63,903 nucleotides of DNA from Chara braunii (Eukaryota; Plantae; Charophyceae): the NCBI GenBank assembly GCA_003427395.1, contig BFEA01000023.1:2272790-2336692 (forward strand), given 5' to 3'. The translations under genes and the position numbers were made by a program. Under the pieces are notes generated by a model. That model was not told where the DNA came from, searched no databases, and worked only from the letters and a program-made list of their open reading frames with translations. Below are positions 10,782 to 46,840 of this stretch, one piece after another (position 1 is the stretch's first letter; every line of letters starts with the position of its first letter).

Positions 10782-11249
10782 ATGGCGACCGCAGGGCCTG
10801 TGTGCGTGCCACCTTGTGGCTCTGCCACGTCAGCGATAGGCGTGGCCGGGTCATCGTTGGCGGGGGGGGTGTCGGGATCATCATCCAAGCGGCGGCTGTC
10901 GTGCTGTACATCGTCATCGCTGTGTCCACGTGGCATGTGGGCAAGTAGCAGACGAAGGCAGCAGCGATCATTTGCAGGGTCGAGGTGGTCAGGTGCGGGA
11001 TTGCATGTCGGCGGCGATGATGAAGGCAAGGACCTGCCGAGGCTCAAGCAAGGCCTGACACGTGGGGGCGGCCTATTCCGCGGCAACAACAAATGGGAGA
11101 GGAGGAGGAAGATAGGAGAAGGGAGGGGACGGGGATGCCGATGGAGAGGGACAGTCTGCATGGCTGCAGACTACTACGCGACGCTGGGAGTTCCACGAAA
11201 TGCGTCGAAACAGGAGATCAAGAACGCGTATCGACGGTTGGCAAGGAAG
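10782..11249 (+). CDS. dnaJ: Chloroplast type-A DnaJ (DJA7-like), exon 1: transit peptide plus start of J-domain
   Basis: ATG at 10782; Ser/Arg/Gly-rich N-terminus followed by DYYATLGVPRNASKQEIKNAYRRLARK; donor AAG|GTATGC, phase 0. Confidence 0.9.
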
Positions 11250-12205
11250 GTATGCACGCGCGTCAGCCAATCACCATCACAACCACCATCATCATCATCA
11301 GGCTAGTCAAAAGAATGTAGCCGTAATCACGGGCAGATGCACGAGGGAGGTGTTTATCTGACAACGCCCGCACTTTTCGTCTTCCTTACTCTTTGTTCGT
11401 TCTTCCATCTTCTTCTCAGTCCCGTGGCATCTGTAGAGATCAGTGTGGTGGATGCGGGAGCCACACCCCCATGAGAAGTGCTGGAGCGCAGCCAGCCGAA
11501 ATGCATCGGGGAATGTGCGCGTTTACGTGGATGTTTGCACCTGATGACAATAAATGGACGTATCTTTTTGTGTGCATGATCGCATAACATTTGCCTCGCT
11601 ATCTCCTCCTCCTCCTCCTCCTCCTCCTTGTTCTTCTTCTGGACGATTGGGTTGGAAGCATCGGCGCGTAGTGATTAGCCTTGCTTTCTCTATTCTCTAT
11701 TTTCTTGTTCTTTTTCTTCTTCCTCCTCCTCCTCTTCCTCCTCCTCACTCGCTGGGAATGACAAGCCTCGCCCATTCCTCCCGCCTCTGTGCAAGGAAGG
11801 CGGGAGGCTACGACATGCCACGTAGCTTGTCCTCCTTTTTCTTCTTCTTCTTCTTCCCCTTCCTCCTCCCCCCCTTCCTTCTCCTCCTCCTTGACGTTCT
11901 CCCCCCTTCGTCCTTTTTCTTTCCTCCTTTCCCGTTCATCCCCTCCTTCCTTCTCCTCCTCCTTTTCATCCTAATCACTCTCGCTCTCCTCCCCGTCCTC
12001 CTCCCCCTCCTCAACCCCCTCCCCCACCTCCTCCATCTCTTCTTCCCCTTTGTTCTCCTTCTCCGCCTCCTTCTTCCTGTCCTCCCCTCCTTCCTCCGGC
12101 TTCTCATCCTCCTCNNNNNNNNNNNNNNNNNNNNNNNNNNNNNNNNNNNNNNNNNNNNNNNNNNNNNNNNNNNNNNNNNNNNNNNNNNNNNNNNNNNNNN
12201 NNNNN

Positions 12206-13503: not shown

Positions 13504-13506
<3 letters not shown>

Positions 13507-13590
13507 GTCGGTGAAAGTCCAACGAAACAGTCTGTTCGGTACAGTCATGCTTGTTTTGAGTGTATAGCGAATATGACAACACACGCACAC
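13504..13590 (+). mobile_element. 5'-truncated hammerhead-family repeat (CA-associated subfamily)
   Basis: (CA)n-gagtcggtgaaagtccaacgaaacagtctg...acacacgcacac. Confidence 0.65.
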
Positions 13591-14106: not shown

Positions 14107-14404
14107 CAAAATCATGCCATAGATAAGGGGTTTGAATCGACACTCTGTTAGGACTGATAAGTTGGTGTGAGTAAAATCGAGGACTTTTTTCTCTCTCTCT
14201 CAAGGGTGGGTATCGCTCTCTCAAAATTGGGGATCGCTCTCTCGAAGTTGGGTATCGCTCTCTCAAACGGTGGGTAGCGCTCTCTCAAAGGTGGGTATGG
14301 GTGACGTGGCCAGTCCGTATCCATCATTCAATTCGTCTTGGGCGGACTGTCGGGGTTCAACCTCGTGACAAGTCGGTGACCACGTGACAAGTCGGGGTTC
14401 AACC

Positions 14405-14810
14405 TGGGCGAAACAGTCTGGCATAGTCGTGCTGTTTTTGTGGAGTGTGTATGTATGTCGAACATGCAAGCACACAGAGGGTCTGGCACAATCATGGTCC
14501 GCACACCGAGTAGTCACCGAGTATTCACCGAGTATTCACTGAGTCGGGGTGAAACCAGGACGAAACAGTCTGGCACAATCATGCCTTTTTTCTTGGGAGT
14601 TGAGTGCAGCGAACATGACAGCACACACTCAAGCAGCGTCTACACCTTCCCGTCGGGATCCATCGTCCGCACACCGAGTATTCACCGAGTATTCACTGAG
14701 TATTCCGACCGATCAGGTGACCGTACACGTCATTTCGTGAAAGATCATCGCCTGAACACGAAACACGCTGGCACAGTCGTGCTGTTTTTGTGGAGGGTGT
14801 AGAGCACCGT
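14405..14810 (+). repeat. Cluster of degenerate hammerhead-family 3' parts interleaved with accgagtattc repeats
   Basis: cgaaaca(gt/cg)ctggca-a motifs near 14409, 14560 and 14759. Confidence 0.55.
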
Positions 14811-16716: not shown

Positions 16717-17182
16717 GTAGTGGTCTAGAAAACAAAGCCTTTGTTGTGCAGATACAGATGACCATGCGAGGGTTCGAGATATCACAGTATTTTGTTGCAT
16801 AATAATAATTCTAGTATATCTAAACTCAACCATGGCTATCTCAGTGTACTAAATTTCCCGGGGCCCTTTTTCTAAGGTTTCCCTGTTTTTATTTTTATTT
16901 TTATTTTTTGAGTCTTATCGTTACCCTTCTCTTGCCCATTGTCCGAGCCTATCCCCCTAACCCGAACCGCATGAGAAGGGTAACGATGAGACTCAAAAAA
17001 TAAAAATAAAAACAGGGAAACCTTAAGAAAAGGGCCCCGGGAAATTTAATACACTGAGAAAGCCATGCTTGAGTCTAGATATACTAGAATTATTATGCAA
17101 CAAAGTACTGTAATATCTCTAACCCTCGCATGGTCATCTCTATCTGCACAACAAAGCCTTTGTTATCTAGACCACTACCATC

Positions 17183-18881: not shown

Positions 18882-18950
18882 TACCATCCGGATGTGAACA
18901 AGGCAGCTGGAGCAGAAGATAAGTTCAAGGAGATAAGCAATGCCTATGAG
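18882..18950 (+). CDS. dnaJ: DnaJ exon 2 (HPD motif)
   Basis: cag|[23 protein letters not shown]|gtatgt. Confidence 0.95.
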
Positions 18951-19877
18951 GTATGTCGTTGTGCACTGTACCTTGTGAGAGAGATTCATTGCGCTTGGTG
19001 GACGATGAAGTGTATCATTGGGTAGTAAAAGAAATTAAACAGAGTCGCCATGGTTGGGGTATTTCGTTTTGCGGACCTACTGTATGGTTCCGTTTTCTTA
19101 CTATTGATATGGCAGAATTTGTTTTGGTAACCTTGTCTGCGCCCCGGCTGGTTTGGTCGGTCTATTTTGGGATGCGTAGTGGTGCTTTCATGTGGGACTA
19201 GTCATCCGGGTTCTTTTTTATTTTTGCATCCGGGTTGGTTGATTCCCGTTGTTCGGCCTGTGTGTTTGGGGGCGGTGCTTTTATGTGGGAATCGTCATCT
19301 GGGATTGTCTTTTATGTTTGTTGCGGTGGCCGCAATAGATTCAATTCTTTTTGGCAGATAAGGTGTTTTTTGCCATCCTGGCTGGTTGCTTCCCGTTGAT
19401 CGGCCTATAGTGCGGGGGCGGTGCTTATATGTGGGAATCGTCAACCGGGATTGTTTTTTTTATGCGTATCTGTTGGTGGTGTCGAAGGCTTTATCATGTT
19501 TTGAATCCTGGCTGGTTTGTCCCGTCGATTTGGCCTGTGGCGTGGGGGCGGTGTTTGCATGTGGGACTTGTCATCTAGGATTCGTTTGCCCCCTGTTCTG
19601 TAATGTTTGGCTGTTCCCTTCCTCTTTTCATTGTCTCTTCGCCTTTTGGCTGTGTGCAAGTGGGTCGATATGACACAGGGGGTGGGGGCGGCCGTCACTC
19701 AACCTACATCCACGTGGGCGGCCTTGTACGCAAGAGGTTCTGAACAGGGGGAGTTGTAAGGAAGAAGATTTTAAAAAATCGAATTTATTTTTCTTTGTTT
19801 TCTTTCTGTTTCCCTTTCGCTTTTGCGCTCTGACAACTTTGTGACAATATATATACATATAGATATGTATATATCTA

Positions 19878-20225
19878 GATGAAACAGTTTTTGACGTCTT
19901 CCTTTTGCCTCGTTTGTTGTCCTCTTCTCCGTCTCTGCCTACGGTTCACCGTGCCGTTCTCTATGACGATATATATTCTTGTCCTTTGCTACCTTTCTAT
20001 CTACCTTTCACCAGGCAGTTCTCTGTGATTATTCATATATATATACCTCCTGATGAGTCGGTGAAACTCCGACGAAACAGTTTGTCACAGCCCCTCGGTT
20101 GTTGTCCTCTTCTCCCTCTCTGCCTACGGTTTACCATAGGGCAGCTGTGTTTGACGATATAGATATGTTTCCTGTTCTTTTCTTCCTTTCTGTCTACGGT
20201 ACACGGGGAAGTCTCCTATGAGGAC
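19878..20225 (+). mobile_element. Tandem cluster of hammerhead-family repeats (TA-associated subfamily); core-bearing copy at 20046-20165
   Basis: (TA)n-cctcCTGATGAgtcggtgaaactccgacGAAAcagtttgtcacagcccctc...gtttgacgatata, flanked by partial copies. Confidence 0.8.
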
Positions 20226-40887: not shown

Positions 40888-40988
40888 TGTCCTTCGGGGC
40901 GTCCGTTAAAATTGGAACGATACAGGGAAAGAAGATGAGCATGGGCCCTGCACAAGCATGGTATGCATAGATCAAGAAACATTCCAAA
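40888..40988 (+). pseudogene. U6: Degenerate U6 snRNA copy
   Basis: tgtccttcggggcgtccgttaaaattggaacgatacag...gaagatgagcatgggccctgcacaag. Confidence 0.85.
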
Positions 40989-41309
40989 AGATCGTGTAGT
41001 ATTTGTTCTGGTCAGTTCAATATGTGATCCATGGTCCATTGGGTACAAAAAAGAAAAATAAAACAGAAATAGAAAAAGAAAGGAGATGTGTGTCATCTGG
41101 CAAGATACTAAATGGTGAGCTAGGCTTCCGGTGCCGCCCTGCCTGGCCGGCACTGCCGTGGACCTGTGCTGCCTTTTTTTTAATGTTTGTTTTCTTCTCT
41201 CTTTTTTTTGGTGCTGGGCCTCTGCTGCGCCTGCAGATATCTTCACGAAGCTTCCATGTTTGCACTTGTTGGCCACACTAGTATTTCGCGAGTGGCAAGG
41301 GGGGGGGGG

Positions 41310-41880
41310 GGGGGTTGGGTGGGGTCTCTCTGACTCCAAGTGTTGGGGACGGGAGTGGGAGGTGGCAGGAGTGACGTCCGATATGGCGGAAGGGAGGTTG
41401 GAGATGACGGAAGGGAGGTGGGAGGTGGGAGGTGGCGAGAGTAAGGTGAGAGATGACGGAAGGGAGGTAAGAGGTGGCGGGAAAAGAGGTGGGAGGTGGT
41501 GGGATGGATGTTAAAGATGGCGGGAGTGAGGTTGGGGATGGTGGAAGGGAGGTGGGAGATGGCGGAAGGGAGGTTGGGGATGTCGGGAGAGAGGGAGGGT
41601 TGGGTGGGGTCTCTCTGACTCCAAGTGTTGGGGGCGGGAGTGGGAGGTGGCAGGAGTGACGTCCGATATGGCGGAAGGGAGGTTGGAGATGACGGAAGGG
41701 AGGTGGAGGTGGGAGGTGGCGAGAGTAAGGTGAGAGATGACGGAAGGGAGGTAAGAGGTGGCGGGAAAAGAGGTGGGAGGTGGTGGGATGGACGTTAAAG
41801 ATGGCGGGAGTGAGGTTGGGGATGGTGGAAGGGAGGTGGGAGATGGCGGAAGGGAGGTGGGGGATGTCGGGAGGGAGGTT
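41310..41880. repeat. ~290-bp purine-rich tandem duplication
   Basis: gggttgggtggggtctctctgactccaagtg... repeated near 41312 and 41597. Confidence 0.85.
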
Positions 41881-42753
41881 GCCCCGGTGTCCCTGAAATT
41901 GGCCCCCCAAGACATGCGCGCTGAGGCCACACGGGGCCTGACCGGGGGACCCACACGGCCGTGCGCCCATGCGGGGCATCCATGCGTGTCGCGGGGGCCT
42001 GTGGGGATGGAAATGAAGCCTAGGTAGTGAGAGAGTAGATGTCTGTCATCTGGCAAGAAACTTAGTGAGCGAGTACTTCTTCAGCTTCCCAATGATTGGA
42101 TGATAGTGCAGATTGCACTTCTCTCTCACTGGTGGCAGCGCTGCAGGCAATTCATTAGGGCCAGGCCGCACGGTTCGCGTAACTCGTGCTTAGAAAGCAC
42201 GAACCTGCCCACTAAAACGCCCAGATTCATGCTAGCATAGCATGAACACAGCACAGGTGCCCTTAGTCTGGTTTCCGGTTGGATCTCTGTGTAATCTCGA
42301 GCAAAGACATAATAAGATGAAAGAATCTGGTTCTGGTTGGCATGCTTAATATCAATCTGGAAGTGCAAGAGGGTGGCTGCCACACCCAAATGCACACATC
42401 AAGCCAAGACTTCTACTGCCAAATTGCTGAATATATCAGTGTCCGGAACTGTGTTACAGCCCACTGTGATCATCGCGAACCTTCATCGTTTGAAAGTTGC
42501 GATACGTCCGCTCCTAACAATCGCCACATCGTGATGCTAGCACGATGCTAGCATACACCAAAATTGTTTGAGCTGCGAGGTGATGGCTCCTTGTTATCAG
42601 TATGCCGCACAACAGCATATTGCTAGCGTTCATTCTGAGCCAGAATCAAACTCTGTTTTTTTTTAATTTTATTATGGCCTAATTTCTGGAATGTAGGATT
42701 TGAAACGACAACAATGAGTTTACCAGTTCCAGTCAATCCAATCTTAGTTAGCG

Positions 42754-42964: not shown

Positions 42965-43052
42965 ATACCTTTCTCGGCCTTTTGGCTCCGATCAAGTGTA
43001 GTCTCTGTTCTAAACAGTTCAATATCTGATCCGTAGTCCATCAGGCCACATT
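42965..43052 (+). pseudogene. U2: U2 snRNA 5' fragment (3'-truncated, mutated)
   Basis: ATACCTTTCTCGGCCTTTTGGCT..GATCAAGTGTAGT.TCTGTTCT...CAGTT.AATATCTGAT is the plant U2 5' end; the GTAGTA branch-pairing box is mutated. Confidence 0.9.
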
Positions 43053-43326
43053 TTTCAAAGATCAGTGGCAGTTTTTGTCCAATTTGAAGGAACAGCAGTG
43101 CAAGGAATGTACTGTTCTTTCATTTTCTGCTGTTTGTTGTGTGGGCTGTCACACAGAGAGTAATGCAATTGGTAGAGGGAATAAAGGTCATAGCATAGCA
43201 ACAAGTCAGCAACCGTAGGCTCATGCATGGATGTCGTCCTGGGCGGATTGTCGAATCTGTGAAGTCCATCAGTTGATTGTGATGGAATGATTCTTTGAGT
43301 TTCAGTGTCGAAGAAGAAGAAGAAGC

Positions 43327-43449
43327 ATATATATACGTCAAACAGAGCTGCCCGGTAAACCGTAGGCAGAGAGGGAGAAGAGGACAACGAACGAGGGGCT
43401 GTGACAAACTGTTTCGTCGGAGTTTCACCAACTCATCAGGAAGGCTGAA
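43327..43449 (-). mobile_element. Hammerhead-family repeat, 5'-truncated, inverted relative to the 43517 copy
   Basis: Reverse complement ttcagccttcCTGATGAgttggtgaaactccgacGAAAcagtttgtcacagcccctcg...gtttgacgtatatata. Confidence 0.85.
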
Positions 43450-43516
43450 GCATATATTATCCACAGCCGGGGTTAAGGTGGATTATCACTTACGGTGTAA
43501 TCAGTTAGGGGATTCT

Positions 43517-43576
43517 GCAGACTGTTGAGGGTTCAGCCTCCTGATGAGTCGGTGAAACTCCGACGAAACAGTTTGC
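43517..43576 (+). ncRNA. Type III hammerhead ribozyme
   Basis: Stem III gcagactgt/acagtttgc (9 bp); GUU cleavage triplet; stem I gagg/cctc; CUGAUGA; stem II gtcgg/ccgac; GAAA. Confidence 0.88.
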
Positions 43577-44400
43577 CACAGCCCCTCGTTTGTTTTCCTC
43601 TTCTCCCTCTCTGCCTACGGTTTACCGGGCAGCTCTGTTTGACTATTATATATATATATATGGTGTTCCTGACACTCACTGATTTGATGGATTTCCAAAT
43701 TTCTGCGATTCTCGCCGATTCATGGTTTTCTTTGAGCAGCAGCTAATTGTATGATTCTTAGAGTTTGCAGTTGTTGCAACTTCTCCAGTCTTTTCGGCGA
43801 AGAAAGAGAGGGAAAACACTGCAAAACAGTGCGATGGTACGCCGCGGAGTCCGCACCCAGTTATTCAATGCATGGATGTGCACTGAGTAATAGAATAAGA
43901 AGTATGCTCAGTCGATGGTGTCCGTTCAAGGCATCGAGATGGCATCCATTGAAGACTCGATGCCATGTTTTCAACATTGGTAATGTACTAGTTCGGGGTG
44001 GAAAAAAAAAAAGAAGGGGGAAAAAAAGTAAGGCGCTGACTTTCTGACTGACCACTGCGCACTCACTTCAAGATTTGAATACTTGGATTGGATATGCTTC
44101 CACATCTTCTCCTGCACGACTGCATTTCGATTTGCTTCTACATCCTCTCGTGGAGGACTGAATGGCTGATGAGCTGATGCTATATCTCTTGAACCTCACA
44201 TTTGTCTGGAAAAGAATAAGAATAAGTAAATTGAAACCTGGGTGAGGGTTTTCCCACCACCCGCTCCTTTTTGCGCATTTTATCTGTGAATCTCTTCCCG
44301 TGGCTGTGAAGTTCTTCCCGTGGCCTTGGTGCAAGTACTGAGAAGGGAAGCGGGTGATTGATTCATTTGACTAAGGACACACTCACACTAGGACTCGGTG

Positions 44401-44649
44401 CACTCAGATCTGGACGTGATTGCGGTTAGATGCATTCAAGTCTGGAGGTAATTGCAGCCAGGTACACTTAAGAAAAGTGCGAGTGTGAGTATGCCCTAAT
44501 TTGTGCCAGCTTGCCAAGTAGGACTTTCTGCCCTCAGCTCTGGACGTGATTGCGGTTAGATGCACTCAGGTCTGGACGTAATTGCAGCCAGGTACATTCA
44601 GAAAAGTGCTAGTGTGAGTATGCCCTAATTCATGCCAACTTGGCCAGTA
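44401..44649 (+). repeat. ~130-bp tandem duplication
   Basis: tctggacgtgattgcggttagatgca...gagtatgccctaat occurs twice. Confidence 0.85.
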
Positions 44650-45072
44650 TATATCCTGAGCACCAACCGGGCAGTGGCCACTGTGAAAGTCTGTGCATTA
44701 CATTTTCACGTCTTTTTTTTGCACTAAATTAGCAACGCTGAACTGTGATAGCACTTTTTACGACCGTCTAGGCTCGATTCGTGATATTAGGTTGGGGGAA
44801 GGAAGGCGTCAAAGGGGTGGATTTTGGCGTTCGGGGGTGCAGGTGGGGGGTGGTGGGAGATGGACGATAGAGATTGGTGGGTGGTGCTCTGCGGGGAGAT
44901 GTTATGTAAGGCGTGGGCTTGCCATATCGTTTTTTCACTTGTAGTGGTAGTTCCTGGCAAGTGGTTTTGAAATTCTTGATGATTGGCTGAGTGCTTTGTT
45001 GCGATTGTTCCCTTCACACCCTTGTCCCTTGTCTTCCATGTCTGTCTGGACCTCCGTTTTCGTTTTCTTTTG

Positions 45073-45822
45073 TTTTTTCCTCTCCGTTTTTAGTCCTCAT
45101 GTTTGTCCGACTTTTCGTTATGTCTGTCGCCGTCTTCGGCTTTGTATTTTTTTTTTTTAATCTTTGTATTCAAGTTTTGCAATTGATCTTTGTACTTGTC
45201 TCGGCAAGCGTCCTCGTCTTTGTCATTGTTCTTTGCCTTTCTCTTCAGATTCACCTTCACGTCTGTTCTCGTCTTCTCCATCTTTCTCGACAAAGCACTA
45301 GCAGCACCATAGCCATCGAAATGGCCACCTCTTTTGGTTTTTCCTCTCCGTTTTTCGTCCTCATGTTTGTCCGACTTTTCGTTATGTCTGTCGCCGTCTT
45401 CGGCTTTGTATTTTTTTTTCAATCTTTGTATTCAAGTTTTGCAATTGATCTTTGTACTTGTCTCGGCAAGCATCCTCGTCTTTGTCATTGTTCTTTGCCT
45501 TTCTCTTCAGATTCACCTGCACATCCGTTCTCGTCTTCTCCATCTTCTTGACAAAGCACTAGCAGCACCATAGCCATCAAAATGGCCACCTCCCATACGG
45601 AAGTCGCCGTCTTCGGCTTTGTATTTTTTTTTTTAATCTTTGTATTCAAGTTTTGCAATTGATCTTTGTACTTGTCTCGGCAAGCATCCTCGTCTTTGTT
45701 CTTTACCTTTCTCTTCAGATTCACCTTCATGTCCGTTCTCGTCTTCTCCATCTTTCTTGACAAAGCACTAGCAGCACCATAGCCATCGAAATGGCCACCT
45801 CCCATACGGAAGCCGCCGTCTT
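45073..45822 (+). repeat. Three tandem copies of a ~230-260-bp pyrimidine-rich unit
   Basis: gtcgccgtcttcggctttgta...acaaagcactagcagcaccatagccatc occurs three times. Confidence 0.9.
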
Positions 45823-46254
45823 CCCAGTTGCTCACGCAACCCCCTCCCAGCGGCAGTGCTCCGGATCCTGGTGCAGGGACCTCAGAACCACTCCAGCGTA
45901 AAGTGTAGAGTGTAGCCTTCCATGGATGAGCAGGGTTCTCTACTGGGCACTCGTTGGGGGCTGGTAGTGGAGGGAGGTGCTTTTGACATCTACATGATGG
46001 CATTGTACTACAGGGCCTAGTACAGGCTTCTCTTCTTTTTTTCTTTACAGGCTTTTGATTTACTTATACGAGGTGGTTCGACTCTCTCAATGGTCAACAG
46101 TAGGGGTCGGCGTCGTTGAGAACGTGTGGAAACCTGCCCTTCTGATTGTTTTCACTTTTCAGGGCATTTTTTTAATTCTGCTGTGTTACTGGACATGCTT
46201 GGCCTGGCGTCCCAAGCTGGATGCCCACGCGGGATGGCCCGGGTGAGACCCAGG

Positions 46255-46510
46255 TTCTCTCCCCCACCCTCTCCCCTCCCAGATTCTCTCCCCCACCCTC
46301 TCTCCTGCCAGATTCTCTCCCCCACCCTCTCCCTTCCCGTATTCTCTTCCCCACGCTCTCCCCTCCCAGATTCTCTCCTAGACCCTCTTCCCACCCAGAA
46401 TCTCTCCCCCACCCTCTCCCCTCCCAGATTCTCTCCTCGACCCTCTCCCCACCCAGAATCTCTCCCCCACCCTCTCCCCTCCCAGAATCTCTCCCCCACC
46501 CTCTCCCCTA
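46255..46510. repeat. ~29-bp C-rich minisatellite
   Basis: ctctcccccaccctctcccctcccagatt repeated. Confidence 0.85.
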
Positions 46511-46840
46511 ATGGCGGGCTGTGACCGCACCACCTGAGAGCATGCAGAAACTGCAGAGTTCTATATGAAACGAGGTGGTTGAGTTTTGGGGGTGTGGGAG
46601 GTTGCCCGGGGGGGGGGCGGGGATGGTTGGGCGATGACCGAGGGGAGGAGATGCAGTTGGGGAAACACATCACAATAGCGGCAGATGGGGGAAGATTGAT
46701 CAGGAAGGGGGCCAGGACAACACATTGCCATGAGTGAGAGGTGGGAGTAGTAGTTGGGGAGATGGCTTGGCATAAAAGCATTGCGCTTTTTAGTGTTGGT
46801 TTTCAGTGAAACGTTTTTCTTTTTTTTTTATAAAGAATAA

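What the first reader, a model, noticed from the sequence alone, without database searches (positions are those of the whole stretch)
43517..43576. Complete type III hammerhead ribozyme on the sense strand of a DnaJ intron
Seen in sequence: all elements are present and pair. Stem III 43517-43525 pairs with 43568-43576 (8 Watson-Crick pairs + 1 G-U). The GUU triplet predicts a cut after 43526. Stem I is gagg/cctc (loop GUUCAG), the core CUGAUGA is at 43541-47, stem II is gtcgg/ccgac (loop UGAAACU), and GAAA is at 43565-68. Sister copies read gaaacagtCtg, which would turn the G-U into G-C, so the variation preserves the structure. Established: type III hammerheads mark plant retrozymes, viroids and satellite RNAs. 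Inference: this is a genomic self-cleaving RNA in what looks like an early-diverging streptophyte.
Basis: partly seen in the sequence, partly recalled or inferred. Interest (0 to 1): 0.9.

Follow-up and report, generated by a model that had tools for sequence, protein, structure and literature searches.

The report
Hammerhead ribozyme in retroelement fragment
The self-cutting RNA motif is really there and looks intact, but it sits in a short, silent, truncated copy of a very abundant jumping element of this alga, of a kind already reported to carry hammerheads, and it has not been shown to lie in a DnaJ intron.

Summary
Window 43517-43576 (+) holds a complete type III hammerhead motif, exactly as described. 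It scores 45.8 bits on Rfam Hammerhead_3, just under the 48.5 gathering score, with a local E-value of 3.7e-9. Its minimum-energy fold is the hammerhead fold.

It is not a stand-alone ribozyme gene, a viroid-like unit or an LTR retrozyme. It lies in a roughly 185-nt, 5'-truncated copy (~43460-43645) of a dispersed non-coding repeat. That copy is joined head-to-head to a shorter inverted copy (43336-43449), with (TA)n at all three junctions. Seven more fragments lie in the window, next to (TA)n or (CA)n, and none has a working ribozyme.

Poly(A) RNA reads cover only the repeat, at hundreds to thousands deep and mostly 95-99% alike, so they come from other copies. The unique flanks have zero depth.

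The anatomy fits Penelope-like (Chlamys) retroelements. Craig et al. 2021 report these in Chara braunii at very high copy number, some with a "canonical 3'-HHR". I could not test identity to those consensus sequences.

The recognisable DnaJ exons end at about 36.2-36.6 kb. The motif lies about 7 kb downstream, so the intron claim is unverified.

This scan has already followed up the same family on other DNA (s1-546361, s1-527501).

The parts
43517..43576 (+). Complete type III hammerhead motif. Stem III is 43517-25/43568-76 and the predicted cut lies between U43526 and G43527. Stem I is 43527-30/43537-40, the core CUGAUGA is 43541-47, stem II is 43548-52/43560-64 and GAAA is 43565-68.
   Evidence: Read directly. 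Rfam RF00008 scores 45.8 bits, E 3.7e-9. The minimum-energy fold equals the hammerhead fold.
43460..43645 (+). 5'-truncated copy of the hammerhead-bearing repeat family: about 57 nt upstream of the ribozyme, the ribozyme, and a tail of about 70 nt with a predicted 3' hairpin (43611-43632). It ends at (TA)n.
   Evidence: blastn and alignment of the window copies. RNA reads of other copies reach back to about 43466 and run into (TA)n at 43641/43646. Fold.
43336..43449 (-). Inverted copy of the same family, truncated at its 5' end inside loop 1, so it lacks the 5' strands of stems III and I. Its 3' end points outward, and with the + copy it forms a 115-nt, 94% inverted repeat.
   Evidence: the repeat finder I1. 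Rfam scores only 14.5 bits. blastn 93.5% over 123 nt. A transcript spanning both arms would fold into a -241 kcal/mol hairpin that buries the ribozyme.
43327..43335 (.). Left (TA)n junction.
   Evidence: loose ends before 43336 are (TA)n.
43451..43458 (.). Middle TA-rich junction between the two copies.
43644..43661 (.). Right (TA)n junction.
20046..20166 (+). Sister copy of the (TA)n subfamily, truncated at its 5' end at the 3' strand of stem I, directly after (TA)n. More severely truncated tail copies lie at 19908-19976 and 20167-20211. It sits inside DnaJ intron 2.
   Evidence: Rfam scores 23.2 bits, E 0.25.
37236..37282 (-). Sister copy flanked by (CA)n on both sides, truncated at its 5' end at stem I. 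GAAA is mutated to AAAA.
13505..13590 (+). Sister copy of the (CA)n subfamily, truncated inside the core. It sits inside DnaJ intron 1.
14336..14620 (+). Two decayed copies of the (CA)n subfamily. The first keeps both strands of stem III and a GUC triplet, but its core reads GUGACAA and carries an internal duplication.
   Evidence: No Rfam hit at E<=1.

Best explanation
The motif is the 3'-proximal hammerhead of a very abundant non-coding retroelement family of this alga. The family is most likely the terminal region of a Penelope-like (Chlamys-type) element, or a non-autonomous derivative of one.

Such elements are copied into (TA)n or (CA)n microsatellites by target-primed reverse transcription. 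That process produces heavy 5' truncation, partial tandems and adjacent inverted truncated copies.

In an active, tandemly arranged or read-through element RNA, the ribozyme would fold on its own, because stem III has 9 bp. It would cut after U43526, trimming the transcript about 120 nt from its 3' end.

The copy at 43460-43645 is an insertion relic. It has kept the whole ribozyme only because its truncation point lies about 57 nt upstream. It has no promoter evidence and is not detectably transcribed. If transcribed together with its inverted neighbour, it would be locked in a 115-bp hairpin.

Shown: the motif, its family membership, the microsatellite junctions, the truncation pattern, the inverted pair, strand-biased family RNA and silent flanks.
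Inferred: the mobilising enzyme, self-cleavage, and the role of the cut.
For: - Motif: complete and significant.
- Copies: nine family pieces lie in the window. All except the focal one and the decayed 14.34-kb copy start 3' of the cut site, at equivalents of 43531, 43536-37, 43543-45, 43562 or later. They directly abut (TA)n or (CA)n.
- Inverted pair: each arm has its own 3' end pointing outward, and each arm carries private differences from the family majority.
- RNA reads: they cover only 43331-43454 and 43517-43646, at up to about 1,900x per strand class in a bin. 2605 of 2794 reads in run X21 are 95-99% alike rather than >=99%. Depth is zero on 43145-43268 and under 1 read up to 43330. 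It is zero on 43703-44322 and on 44695-44985. Under 2 reads lie over the 130-nt repeat at 44323-44694.
- Read junctions: loose ends run into (TA)n at 43336/43339, 43425, 43531/32/35 and 43641/46. 'Goes back' joints show tandem truncated units separated by (TA)n. Strand bias is 3-7:1, the same relative to the element on both arms.
- Literature: Craig et al. 2021 (PMC8557442) describe Chlamys Penelope-like elements in C. braunii. They report very high copy number, a canonical 3'-HHR in Chlamys-2_cBra and the PLE-X type, and insertion bias for (CA)n/(C)n (and (TA)n in the sister Naiads). They also report frequent 5' truncation, partial tandems and an adjacent inverted 5'-truncated copy.
Against: - No reverse transcriptase or GIY-YIG ORF lies near this copy. 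Ten long ORFs of the window gave no Pfam hit.
- The published consensus sequences are not held, so identity with Chlamys-2_cBra or PLE-X could not be tested.
- Published Penelope-like hammerheads are type I or minimal variants (PMC4209133, PMC7761336). This one is type III.
- The paper reports (TA)n targeting for Naiads, not explicitly for Chlamys.
- Reads show no pile-up of RNA ends at 43526/27 (table 6), so cleavage in vivo is not shown.
- The species name rests on earlier scan notes, not on my own test.
Confidence: 0.62

Rival explanations
1. A SINE-like non-autonomous retroposon mobilised by a microsatellite-specific LINE (non-LTR element) rather than by a Penelope-like element. The hammerhead would be a passenger or a 5'-processing device.
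For: - 5' truncation, a 3' terminal hairpin and microsatellite targets are also typical of LINE/SINE pairs (established knowledge of R1/R4-clade elements).
- A LINE lies in the window at about 54.8-63.9 kb.
- No Penelope-type ORF was seen.
Against: - The 211-nt query has no match in the LINE at 54.8-63.9 kb.
- The head-to-head pair has two outward 3' ends. That is the arrangement described for Penelope-like elements (PMC8557442), not the single-element 5' inversion of LINE twin priming.
- Hammerhead-bearing Penelope-like elements are documented in this species.
Confidence: 0.17
2. One reading: a retrozyme or viroid-like system whose RNA is excised by hammerheads and circularised. Here it would lie in a DnaJ intron, where it would cleave the pre-mRNA.
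For: - Type III topology and the loop 2 and stem II sequence resemble the plant/viroid consensus of RF00008.
- The family RNA is abundant and strand-biased.
- The motif is on the same strand as DnaJ, and a donor-like GTAAGG lies at 36227.
Against: - There is no partner hammerhead in direct orientation, no LTRs or direct repeats and no primer-binding site.
- Most family units are 5'-truncated at varied points inside the ribozyme and lack its 5' part, so tandem arrays of them cannot self-excise.
- No DnaJ exon was found beyond 36.6 kb.
- The four fragments that do lie in DnaJ introns are ribozyme-dead.
Confidence: 0.06
3. The family spreads as the hammerhead-cleaved 3' fragment. Self-cleavage would set the 5' end of the RNA that is reverse-transcribed, which would make the ~115-nt (TA)n-flanked units products of ribozyme processing rather than of random truncation.
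For: - The listed (TA)n junctions on the + arm lie at 43531, 43532 and 43535, and three window copies start at 43531-43537. These are 4-10 nt 3' of the predicted cut.
- Read depth upstream of the ribozyme is only 9-14% of depth on it.
- An earlier follow-up of this scan reached the same idea on other DNA (s1-546361). That is not independent evidence.
Against: - No copy seen here starts exactly at 43527.
- Other 5' ends are spread at equivalents of 43544, 43551-55, 43562, 43572 and within the tail, as expected from ordinary truncation.
- The alignment clip positions are affected by mismatches.
Confidence: 0.15

Closest known systems
Chlamys-type Penelope-like elements of Chara braunii with a canonical 3' hammerhead (Chlamys-2_cBra; PLE-X type), Craig, Yushenova, Rodriguez & Arkhipova 2021 (PMC8557442)
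   Same: - Same species, according to the scan's notes.
- The hammerhead lies near the 3' end.
- Very high copy number.
- Microsatellite insertion bias, 5' truncation, partial tandems and an adjacent inverted truncated copy.
   Different: - Sequence identity was not tested, because the consensus files are not held.
- No ORF accompanies this copy.
- The paper does not state the hammerhead topology, and it reports (CA)n/(C)n for Chlamys. The main subfamily here sits in (TA)n.
Hammerheads of metazoan, fungal and Selaginella Penelope-like elements (Cervera & de la Pena 2014, PMC4209133)
   Same: A hammerhead embedded in the repeated terminal region of a Penelope-like retroelement, proposed to process tandem transcripts.
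   Different: Those are type I or minimal motifs, many with a 1-2 bp helix III that act only as dimers. This one is type III, with a 9-bp helix III and closed helices I and II, so it should fold and cut as a monomer.
Plant LTR retrozymes (Cervera, Urbina & de la Pena 2016, PMC4918200)
   Same: A type III hammerhead in a non-coding, non-autonomous retroelement of the plant lineage. The stem II and loop 2 sequence is close to the RF00008 consensus.
   Different: - There are no LTRs, primer-binding site or polypurine tract, and no pair of direct hammerheads bounding a 600-1000 nt unit.
- Insertion is into microsatellites with 5' truncation.
Animal non-LTR retrozymes, proposed derivatives of Penelope-like pLTRs (bioRxiv 10.64898/2026.07.22.740005; PMC7761336)
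   Same: Short non-coding hammerhead repeats, partly tandem, thought to derive from Penelope-like terminal regions.
   Different: Animal units carry type I hammerheads and each tandem unit holds a whole ribozyme. Here most units lack the 5' third of the ribozyme.
Phage type III hammerheads in IMG/VR contigs (L122, L123)
   Same: An identical 29-nt core, stem II and loop 2.
   Different: Stems I and III and the context (between phage genes) are unrelated. This is a shared common solution, not homology.

Membership tests
Hammerhead ribozyme, type III (Rfam RF00008) | Conserved core: C3-U4-G5-A6-N7-G8-A9, G12-A13-A14, the A15.1-U16.1 pair, H17 at the cut and the G10.1-C11.1 pair. | tested here: met
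   All present: CUGAUGA 43541-47, GAAA 43565-68, U43525-A43568, U43526 and G43548-C43564.
Hammerhead ribozyme, type III (Rfam RF00008) | Three helices, with I and II closed by loops and III open. | tested here: met
   Stems of 4, 5 and 9 bp. The minimum-energy fold reproduces them.
Hammerhead ribozyme, type III (Rfam RF00008) | Score at or above the curated gathering threshold (48.5 bits). | tested here: not met
   45.8 bits, 2.7 bits short. The E-value is 3.7e-9 on 301 nt, and the motif is absent from the gathering scan.
Hammerhead ribozyme, type III (Rfam RF00008) | Compensatory covariation in the stems across copies. | tested here: inconclusive
   - Only one other copy keeps both strands of stem III. 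It shows two one-sided changes.
- In reads, the last pair of stem III is G-C here and G-U or A-U in the family (43517 G>A about 30%, 43576 C>T about 95%).
- No double changes were seen.
Hammerhead ribozyme, type III (Rfam RF00008) | Mg2+-dependent self-cleavage at the predicted site. | not testable with these tools
   Reads show no excess of ends at 43526/27. The libraries are oligo-dT fragment libraries of a multi-copy repeat, so they are not informative on this point.
Plant LTR retrozyme | Two direct LTRs, each with a hammerhead, bounding a non-coding unit. | tested here: not met
   The only other core matches are at 20050 (+, truncated) and 43411 (-, inverted). No direct repeats enclose the site.
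Plant LTR retrozyme | tRNA-Met primer-binding site and polypurine tract. | tested here: not met
   The only near-match to the primer-binding site in the window is at 26992, 16 kb away and at chance level. I did not search for a polypurine tract separately.
Penelope-like element (Chlamys clade), terminal region or non-autonomous derivative | Insertion anatomy: 5' truncation, partial tandems, an adjacent inverted 5'-truncated copy and a microsatellite target. | tested here: met
   compared with the description in PMC8557442.
Penelope-like element (Chlamys clade), terminal region or non-autonomous derivative | The same tail found 3' of a Penelope-type RT (with or without GIY-YIG) ORF, or sequence identity to a curated consensus. 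| not testable with these tools
   - The supplement is not held.
- The window has no such ORF.
- Protein-based attempts to fetch other copies failed.
Animal-type non-LTR retrozyme | Tandem units that each carry a complete (type I) hammerhead and yield circular RNA. | tested here: not met
   This motif is type III. Tandem joints in reads link truncated units that lack stem III 5' and stem I 5'.

The most novel reading that the evidence does not exclude
A monomer-competent type III hammerhead is the standard 3' module of a Penelope-like or non-LTR, microsatellite-targeting retroelement in a streptophyte alga. Its cut would define the ~120-nt RNA that is most often copied back. That would be a third kind of hammerhead retroelement, beside plant LTR retrozymes and animal type I non-LTR retrozymes. 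It would place the association of type III hammerheads with retroelements in the plant lineage before land plants.
Probability: 0.2. Interest if true: 0.6.

Novelty: new member of a known kind. Interest (0 to 1): 0.3.

Why it matters
On its own this copy matters little. It is one silent relic among what seem to be very many, and hammerhead-bearing Penelope-like elements are already published for this species.

The family is of some interest for three reasons:
- Its ribozyme is type III with a long helix III, unlike the type I or minimal hammerheads so far described in Penelope-like elements.
- Its RNA is abundant.
- It sits on the algal side of the plant lineage, where the origin of the type III hammerheads of angiosperm retrozymes and viroid-like RNAs is an open question.

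For annotation, the lesson is that an intact hammerhead in this genome marks a retroelement tail, not a host ribozyme gene. In addition, all four sense-strand fragments that really lie in DnaJ introns here are ribozyme-dead.

Tried and rejected
- Whole-window Rfam scan at gathering: no hammerhead listed, only 3 U6 and 1 U2. The motif appears only at the E-value threshold.
- My first fixed-spacing pattern missed the motif because I miscounted the spacer. Corrected.
- Supplementary consensus files of Craig et al. are not held.
- Fetching other genomic copies through proteins read across the repeat failed.
  - The representative search gave one unrelated tandem-repeat protein, P0001. Its contig L121 has no hammerhead core.
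  - The word-indexed search gave nothing.
- The metagenome scan with a degenerate hammerhead pattern returned 120 generic hammerhead loci. None has this stem II/loop 2 version.
- The viral scan with the exact 29-mer found two phage hammerheads with unrelated stems I and III.
- Pfam on ten long ORFs of the window: no hit.
- PDB sequence search of the DnaJ tail exon and of a candidate ORF at 47.07-47.45 kb: nothing relevant.
- The findings search by sequence was blank.
- A resemblance between the element's 3' end (GCAGCUCUGUUUGAC) and the ribozyme's 5' strand was considered as a sign of a permuted unit. I rejected it: across a (TA)n junction no stem I can form and stem III would be mismatched.
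- DnaJ exons were searched one by one by reference.

Full report
**Observation.** The 60 nt at 43517-43576 (+) read as follows.
- Stem III 5' strand: GCAGACUGU.
- U43526 is position 17, and the predicted cut follows it.
- Stem I: GAGG-GUUCAG-CCUC.
- Core: CUGAUGA.
- Stem II: GUCGG-UGAAACU-CCGAC.
- GAAA, then the stem III 3' strand CAGUUUGC.

All invariant core positions are in place, including the A15.1-U16.1 pair (A43568-U43525) and the G10.1-C11.1 pair (G43548-C43564).

Rfam Hammerhead_3 matches end to end at 45.8 bits, E 3.7e-9 for the 301 nt searched. That is 2.7 bits under the curated gathering score, which is why the whole-window scan at gathering does not list it. The core pattern with a variable spacer occurs three times in the window against 0.02 expected. 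The minimum-energy fold of the 60-mer is the hammerhead junction, at -23.6 kcal/mol with z = -3.2. The same fold survives in the 191-nt element context.

**What the motif sits in.** It is not solitary.
- The repeat finder shows a 115-nt inverted repeat, 94% complementary, with arms 43327-43441 and 43539-43653.
- The left arm is a copy of the same sequence on the minus strand. It starts inside loop 1, so it lacks the 5' strands of stems III and I. Rfam scores it at 14.5 bits.
- Both copies have their 3' ends pointing outward, at 43336 and about 43645. TA repeats lie at the left, middle and right junctions.
- blastn of 43455-43665 against the window finds seven further pieces.

These pieces fall into two subfamilies.
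- The (TA)n subfamily has a tail of about 70 nt and includes 19908-19976, 20046-20166 and 20167-20211.
- The (CA)n subfamily has a different, shorter tail and includes 13505, 14342, 14540 and 37282(-).

Apart from the focal copy and the decayed 14.34-kb copy, every piece begins 3' of the predicted cut site and directly abuts a microsatellite. None of them is a working ribozyme:
- the core is missing at 13505;
- the core reads GUGACAA, with an internal duplication, at 14342;
- stem II is decayed at 14540;
- the 5' third is missing at 20046;
- GAAA has become AAAA at 37282.

Rfam gives at most 23.2 bits for any of them.

**Expression.** I laid three oligo-dT RNA runs (raw reads) and one contig set of the same organism label on 43145-44985. 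This stretch avoids the U2 and U6 copies and the tandem repeats.
- Depth is confined to the two repeat arms, at hundreds to about 1,900 reads per strand class in a bin, although only 6-13% of each run was read.
- Depth is zero at 43145-43268 and under 1 read up to 43330.
- It is zero at 43703-44322 and at 44695-44985. Under 2 reads lie over the 130-nt repeat at 44323-44694.
- About 93% of the laid reads are 95-99% alike rather than >=99%.
- At the positions private to this copy (43494, 43576, 43595), 78-100% of reads carry another letter.

The reads therefore come overwhelmingly from other copies. The family is highly represented in poly(A) RNA, while this locus shows no transcription of its own.

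Strand bias is 3-7:1 and mirrored on the two arms, so it is the same relative to the element. If the libraries are of the usual dUTP type, the RNA is hammerhead-sense.

Read ends that leave the stretch run into (TA)n at 43336/43339, 43425, 43531/43532/43535 and 43641/43646. 'Goes back' joints show truncated units in tandem, separated by (TA)n. Depth just upstream of the ribozyme (43455-43516) is 9-14% of depth on it. No excess of molecule ends was reported at 43526/43527, but these libraries cannot show cleavage of a multi-copy RNA.

**Interpretation.** The features are:
- heavy 5' truncation;
- microsatellite targets;
- partial tandems;
- an adjacent inverted 5'-truncated copy with its own 3' end.

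These match the structural description of Penelope-like elements given by Craig et al. 2021 (PMC8557442).

Earlier notes of this scan name the genome as Chara braunii. I did not verify the species. For this species the same paper reports three Chlamys types at very high copy number. One (Chlamys-2_cBra) has a 'canonical 3'-HHR' and a gag-like ORF, and another (PLE-X type) also carries canonical hammerheads. It also reports non-autonomous derivatives of Chlamys elements, in Chlamydomonas reinhardtii, that share the 3' ends of autonomous families.

The best reading is therefore that 43460-43645 is a truncated terminal fragment of such an element, or of a non-autonomous derivative. It retains the whole ribozyme only because truncation happened 57 nt upstream of it.

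The link has gaps:
- the consensus sequences are not held;
- the window has no Penelope-type ORF;
- three attempts to fetch other genomic copies through proteins failed.

A LINE-driven SINE-like element remains a real rival. However, the LINE in the window shares no sequence with the tail, and two outward-facing 3' ends are not what LINE twin priming gives.

**Mechanism.**
- Shown: the RNA of the family exists and is strand-biased, and the focal sequence can adopt the hammerhead fold.
- Inferred from established hammerhead chemistry: in a transcript containing the full motif, the ribozyme cuts 3' of U43526. This leaves a 2',3'-cyclic phosphate upstream and a 5'-OH on G43527, about 120 nt from the element's 3' end. 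With a 9-bp helix III it should act as a monomer, unlike the minimal dimer-dependent hammerheads of animal Penelope-like elements (PMC4209133). GUU is a permitted triplet, though not the best one. The (CA)n subfamily copy at 14.34 kb has GUC.
- Proposed in the literature, not shown: the cut trims read-through or tandem transcripts.
- More specific idea: the cleaved 3' fragment is the main template. Several 5' ends cluster 4-10 nt downstream of the cut (43531-43537), which is suggestive. But no copy seen here begins at 43527, and other truncation points are scattered.
- For this locus: a transcript spanning both arms would fold into a -241 kcal/mol hairpin that sequesters most of the ribozyme. 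That makes it a better Dicer substrate than a ribozyme.

**DnaJ context.** Searched exon by exon, by reference and with no joined model, the + strand carries a plastid-type DnaJ gene.
- J domain: 11154-11252 and 18882-18953.
- Zinc-finger exons: about 25.1 and 27.8 kb.
- DnaJ_C: 30625-30762 and 33282-33440, where the Pfam profile ends.
- Tail exon from 36121, with an in-frame stop at 36580 and a GTAAGG donor-like site at 36227.

The fragments at 13.5, 14.3, 14.5 and 20.05 kb are thus truly intronic and in gene sense, and all are ribozyme-dead. The focal motif lies about 7 kb beyond the last recognisable exon. A further 3' exon cannot be excluded, since the introns here are 2.5-7.6 kb long, but I found none. 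'DnaJ intron' is unverified.

**Comparison and novelty.** The motif is a hammerhead by every sequence and structure criterion except Rfam's curated threshold.
- It fails the defining features of LTR retrozymes: no direct hammerhead pair, LTRs or primer-binding site.
- It fails those of animal non-LTR retrozymes, because it is type III and the tandem units lack a whole ribozyme.
- Its exact core, stem II and loop 2 also occur in two phage hammerheads. That module is therefore a common solution, not a sign of kinship.

Published Penelope-like hammerheads are type I or minimal. A search for 'type III hammerhead' together with 'Penelope-like' found three papers by title. I opened none of them for this point, and one of them (PMC6155905) is a hammerhead review. 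The topology here may therefore be worth a line in a family-level study.

This scan has already followed up the same family on other DNA of the genome and reached similar readings (s1-546361, s1-527501). This copy adds one intact example and a clean head-to-head pair. I rate it a new member of a known kind, of low to moderate interest.

Noticed in passing
window 29330-29430 (-), 33598-33698 (-), 40889-40993 (+), 42965-43139 (+): Three U6 snRNA-like copies (87, 96.7 and 58.5 bits) and one U2-like copy that lacks the central stem-loops (71.6 bits). The U2 copy ends about 190 nt before the hammerhead pair. They are probably retro-pseudogenes or parts of composite repeats.
   Followed up: no
window 16845-17053: A long, near-perfect hairpin that hits several plant MIR precursor families far below their gathering scores (for example MIR837 at 62.9 against 117 bits). 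It looks like a MITE-type inverted repeat inside DnaJ intron 1.
   Followed up: no
L122 3338-3366 (-), L123 3908-3936 (+): Two IMG/VR phage contigs carry an intergenic type III hammerhead with the same 29-nt core, stem II and loop 2 as the algal motif, but with unrelated stems I and III.
   Followed up: partly
window 36121-36582: The DnaJ tail exon has a GTAAGG donor-like site at 36227. Alternatively it reads through for 118 codons to a stop at 36580. The true 3' end of the gene is unresolved.
   Followed up: partly
window 13505-13590, 14336-14620, 19908-20211: All hammerhead-family fragments that lie inside confirmed DnaJ introns are in gene sense and ribozyme-dead (truncated or core-mutated). 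With only four cases this is too few to argue selection against active sense-strand ribozymes in introns.
   Followed up: partly
window 41300-41899, 45066-45823, 46219-46538: Tandem repeat blocks with periods of 21/284 nt, about 262 nt and 29 nt. They give long proline/serine-rich or glycine-rich pseudo-ORFs.
   Followed up: no
window 43461-43468 and 43576-43583: The octamer CCACAGCC occurs both at the 5' edge of the focal copy and just 3' of the ribozyme. It may be microhomology at the truncation junction, or chance.
   Followed up: no
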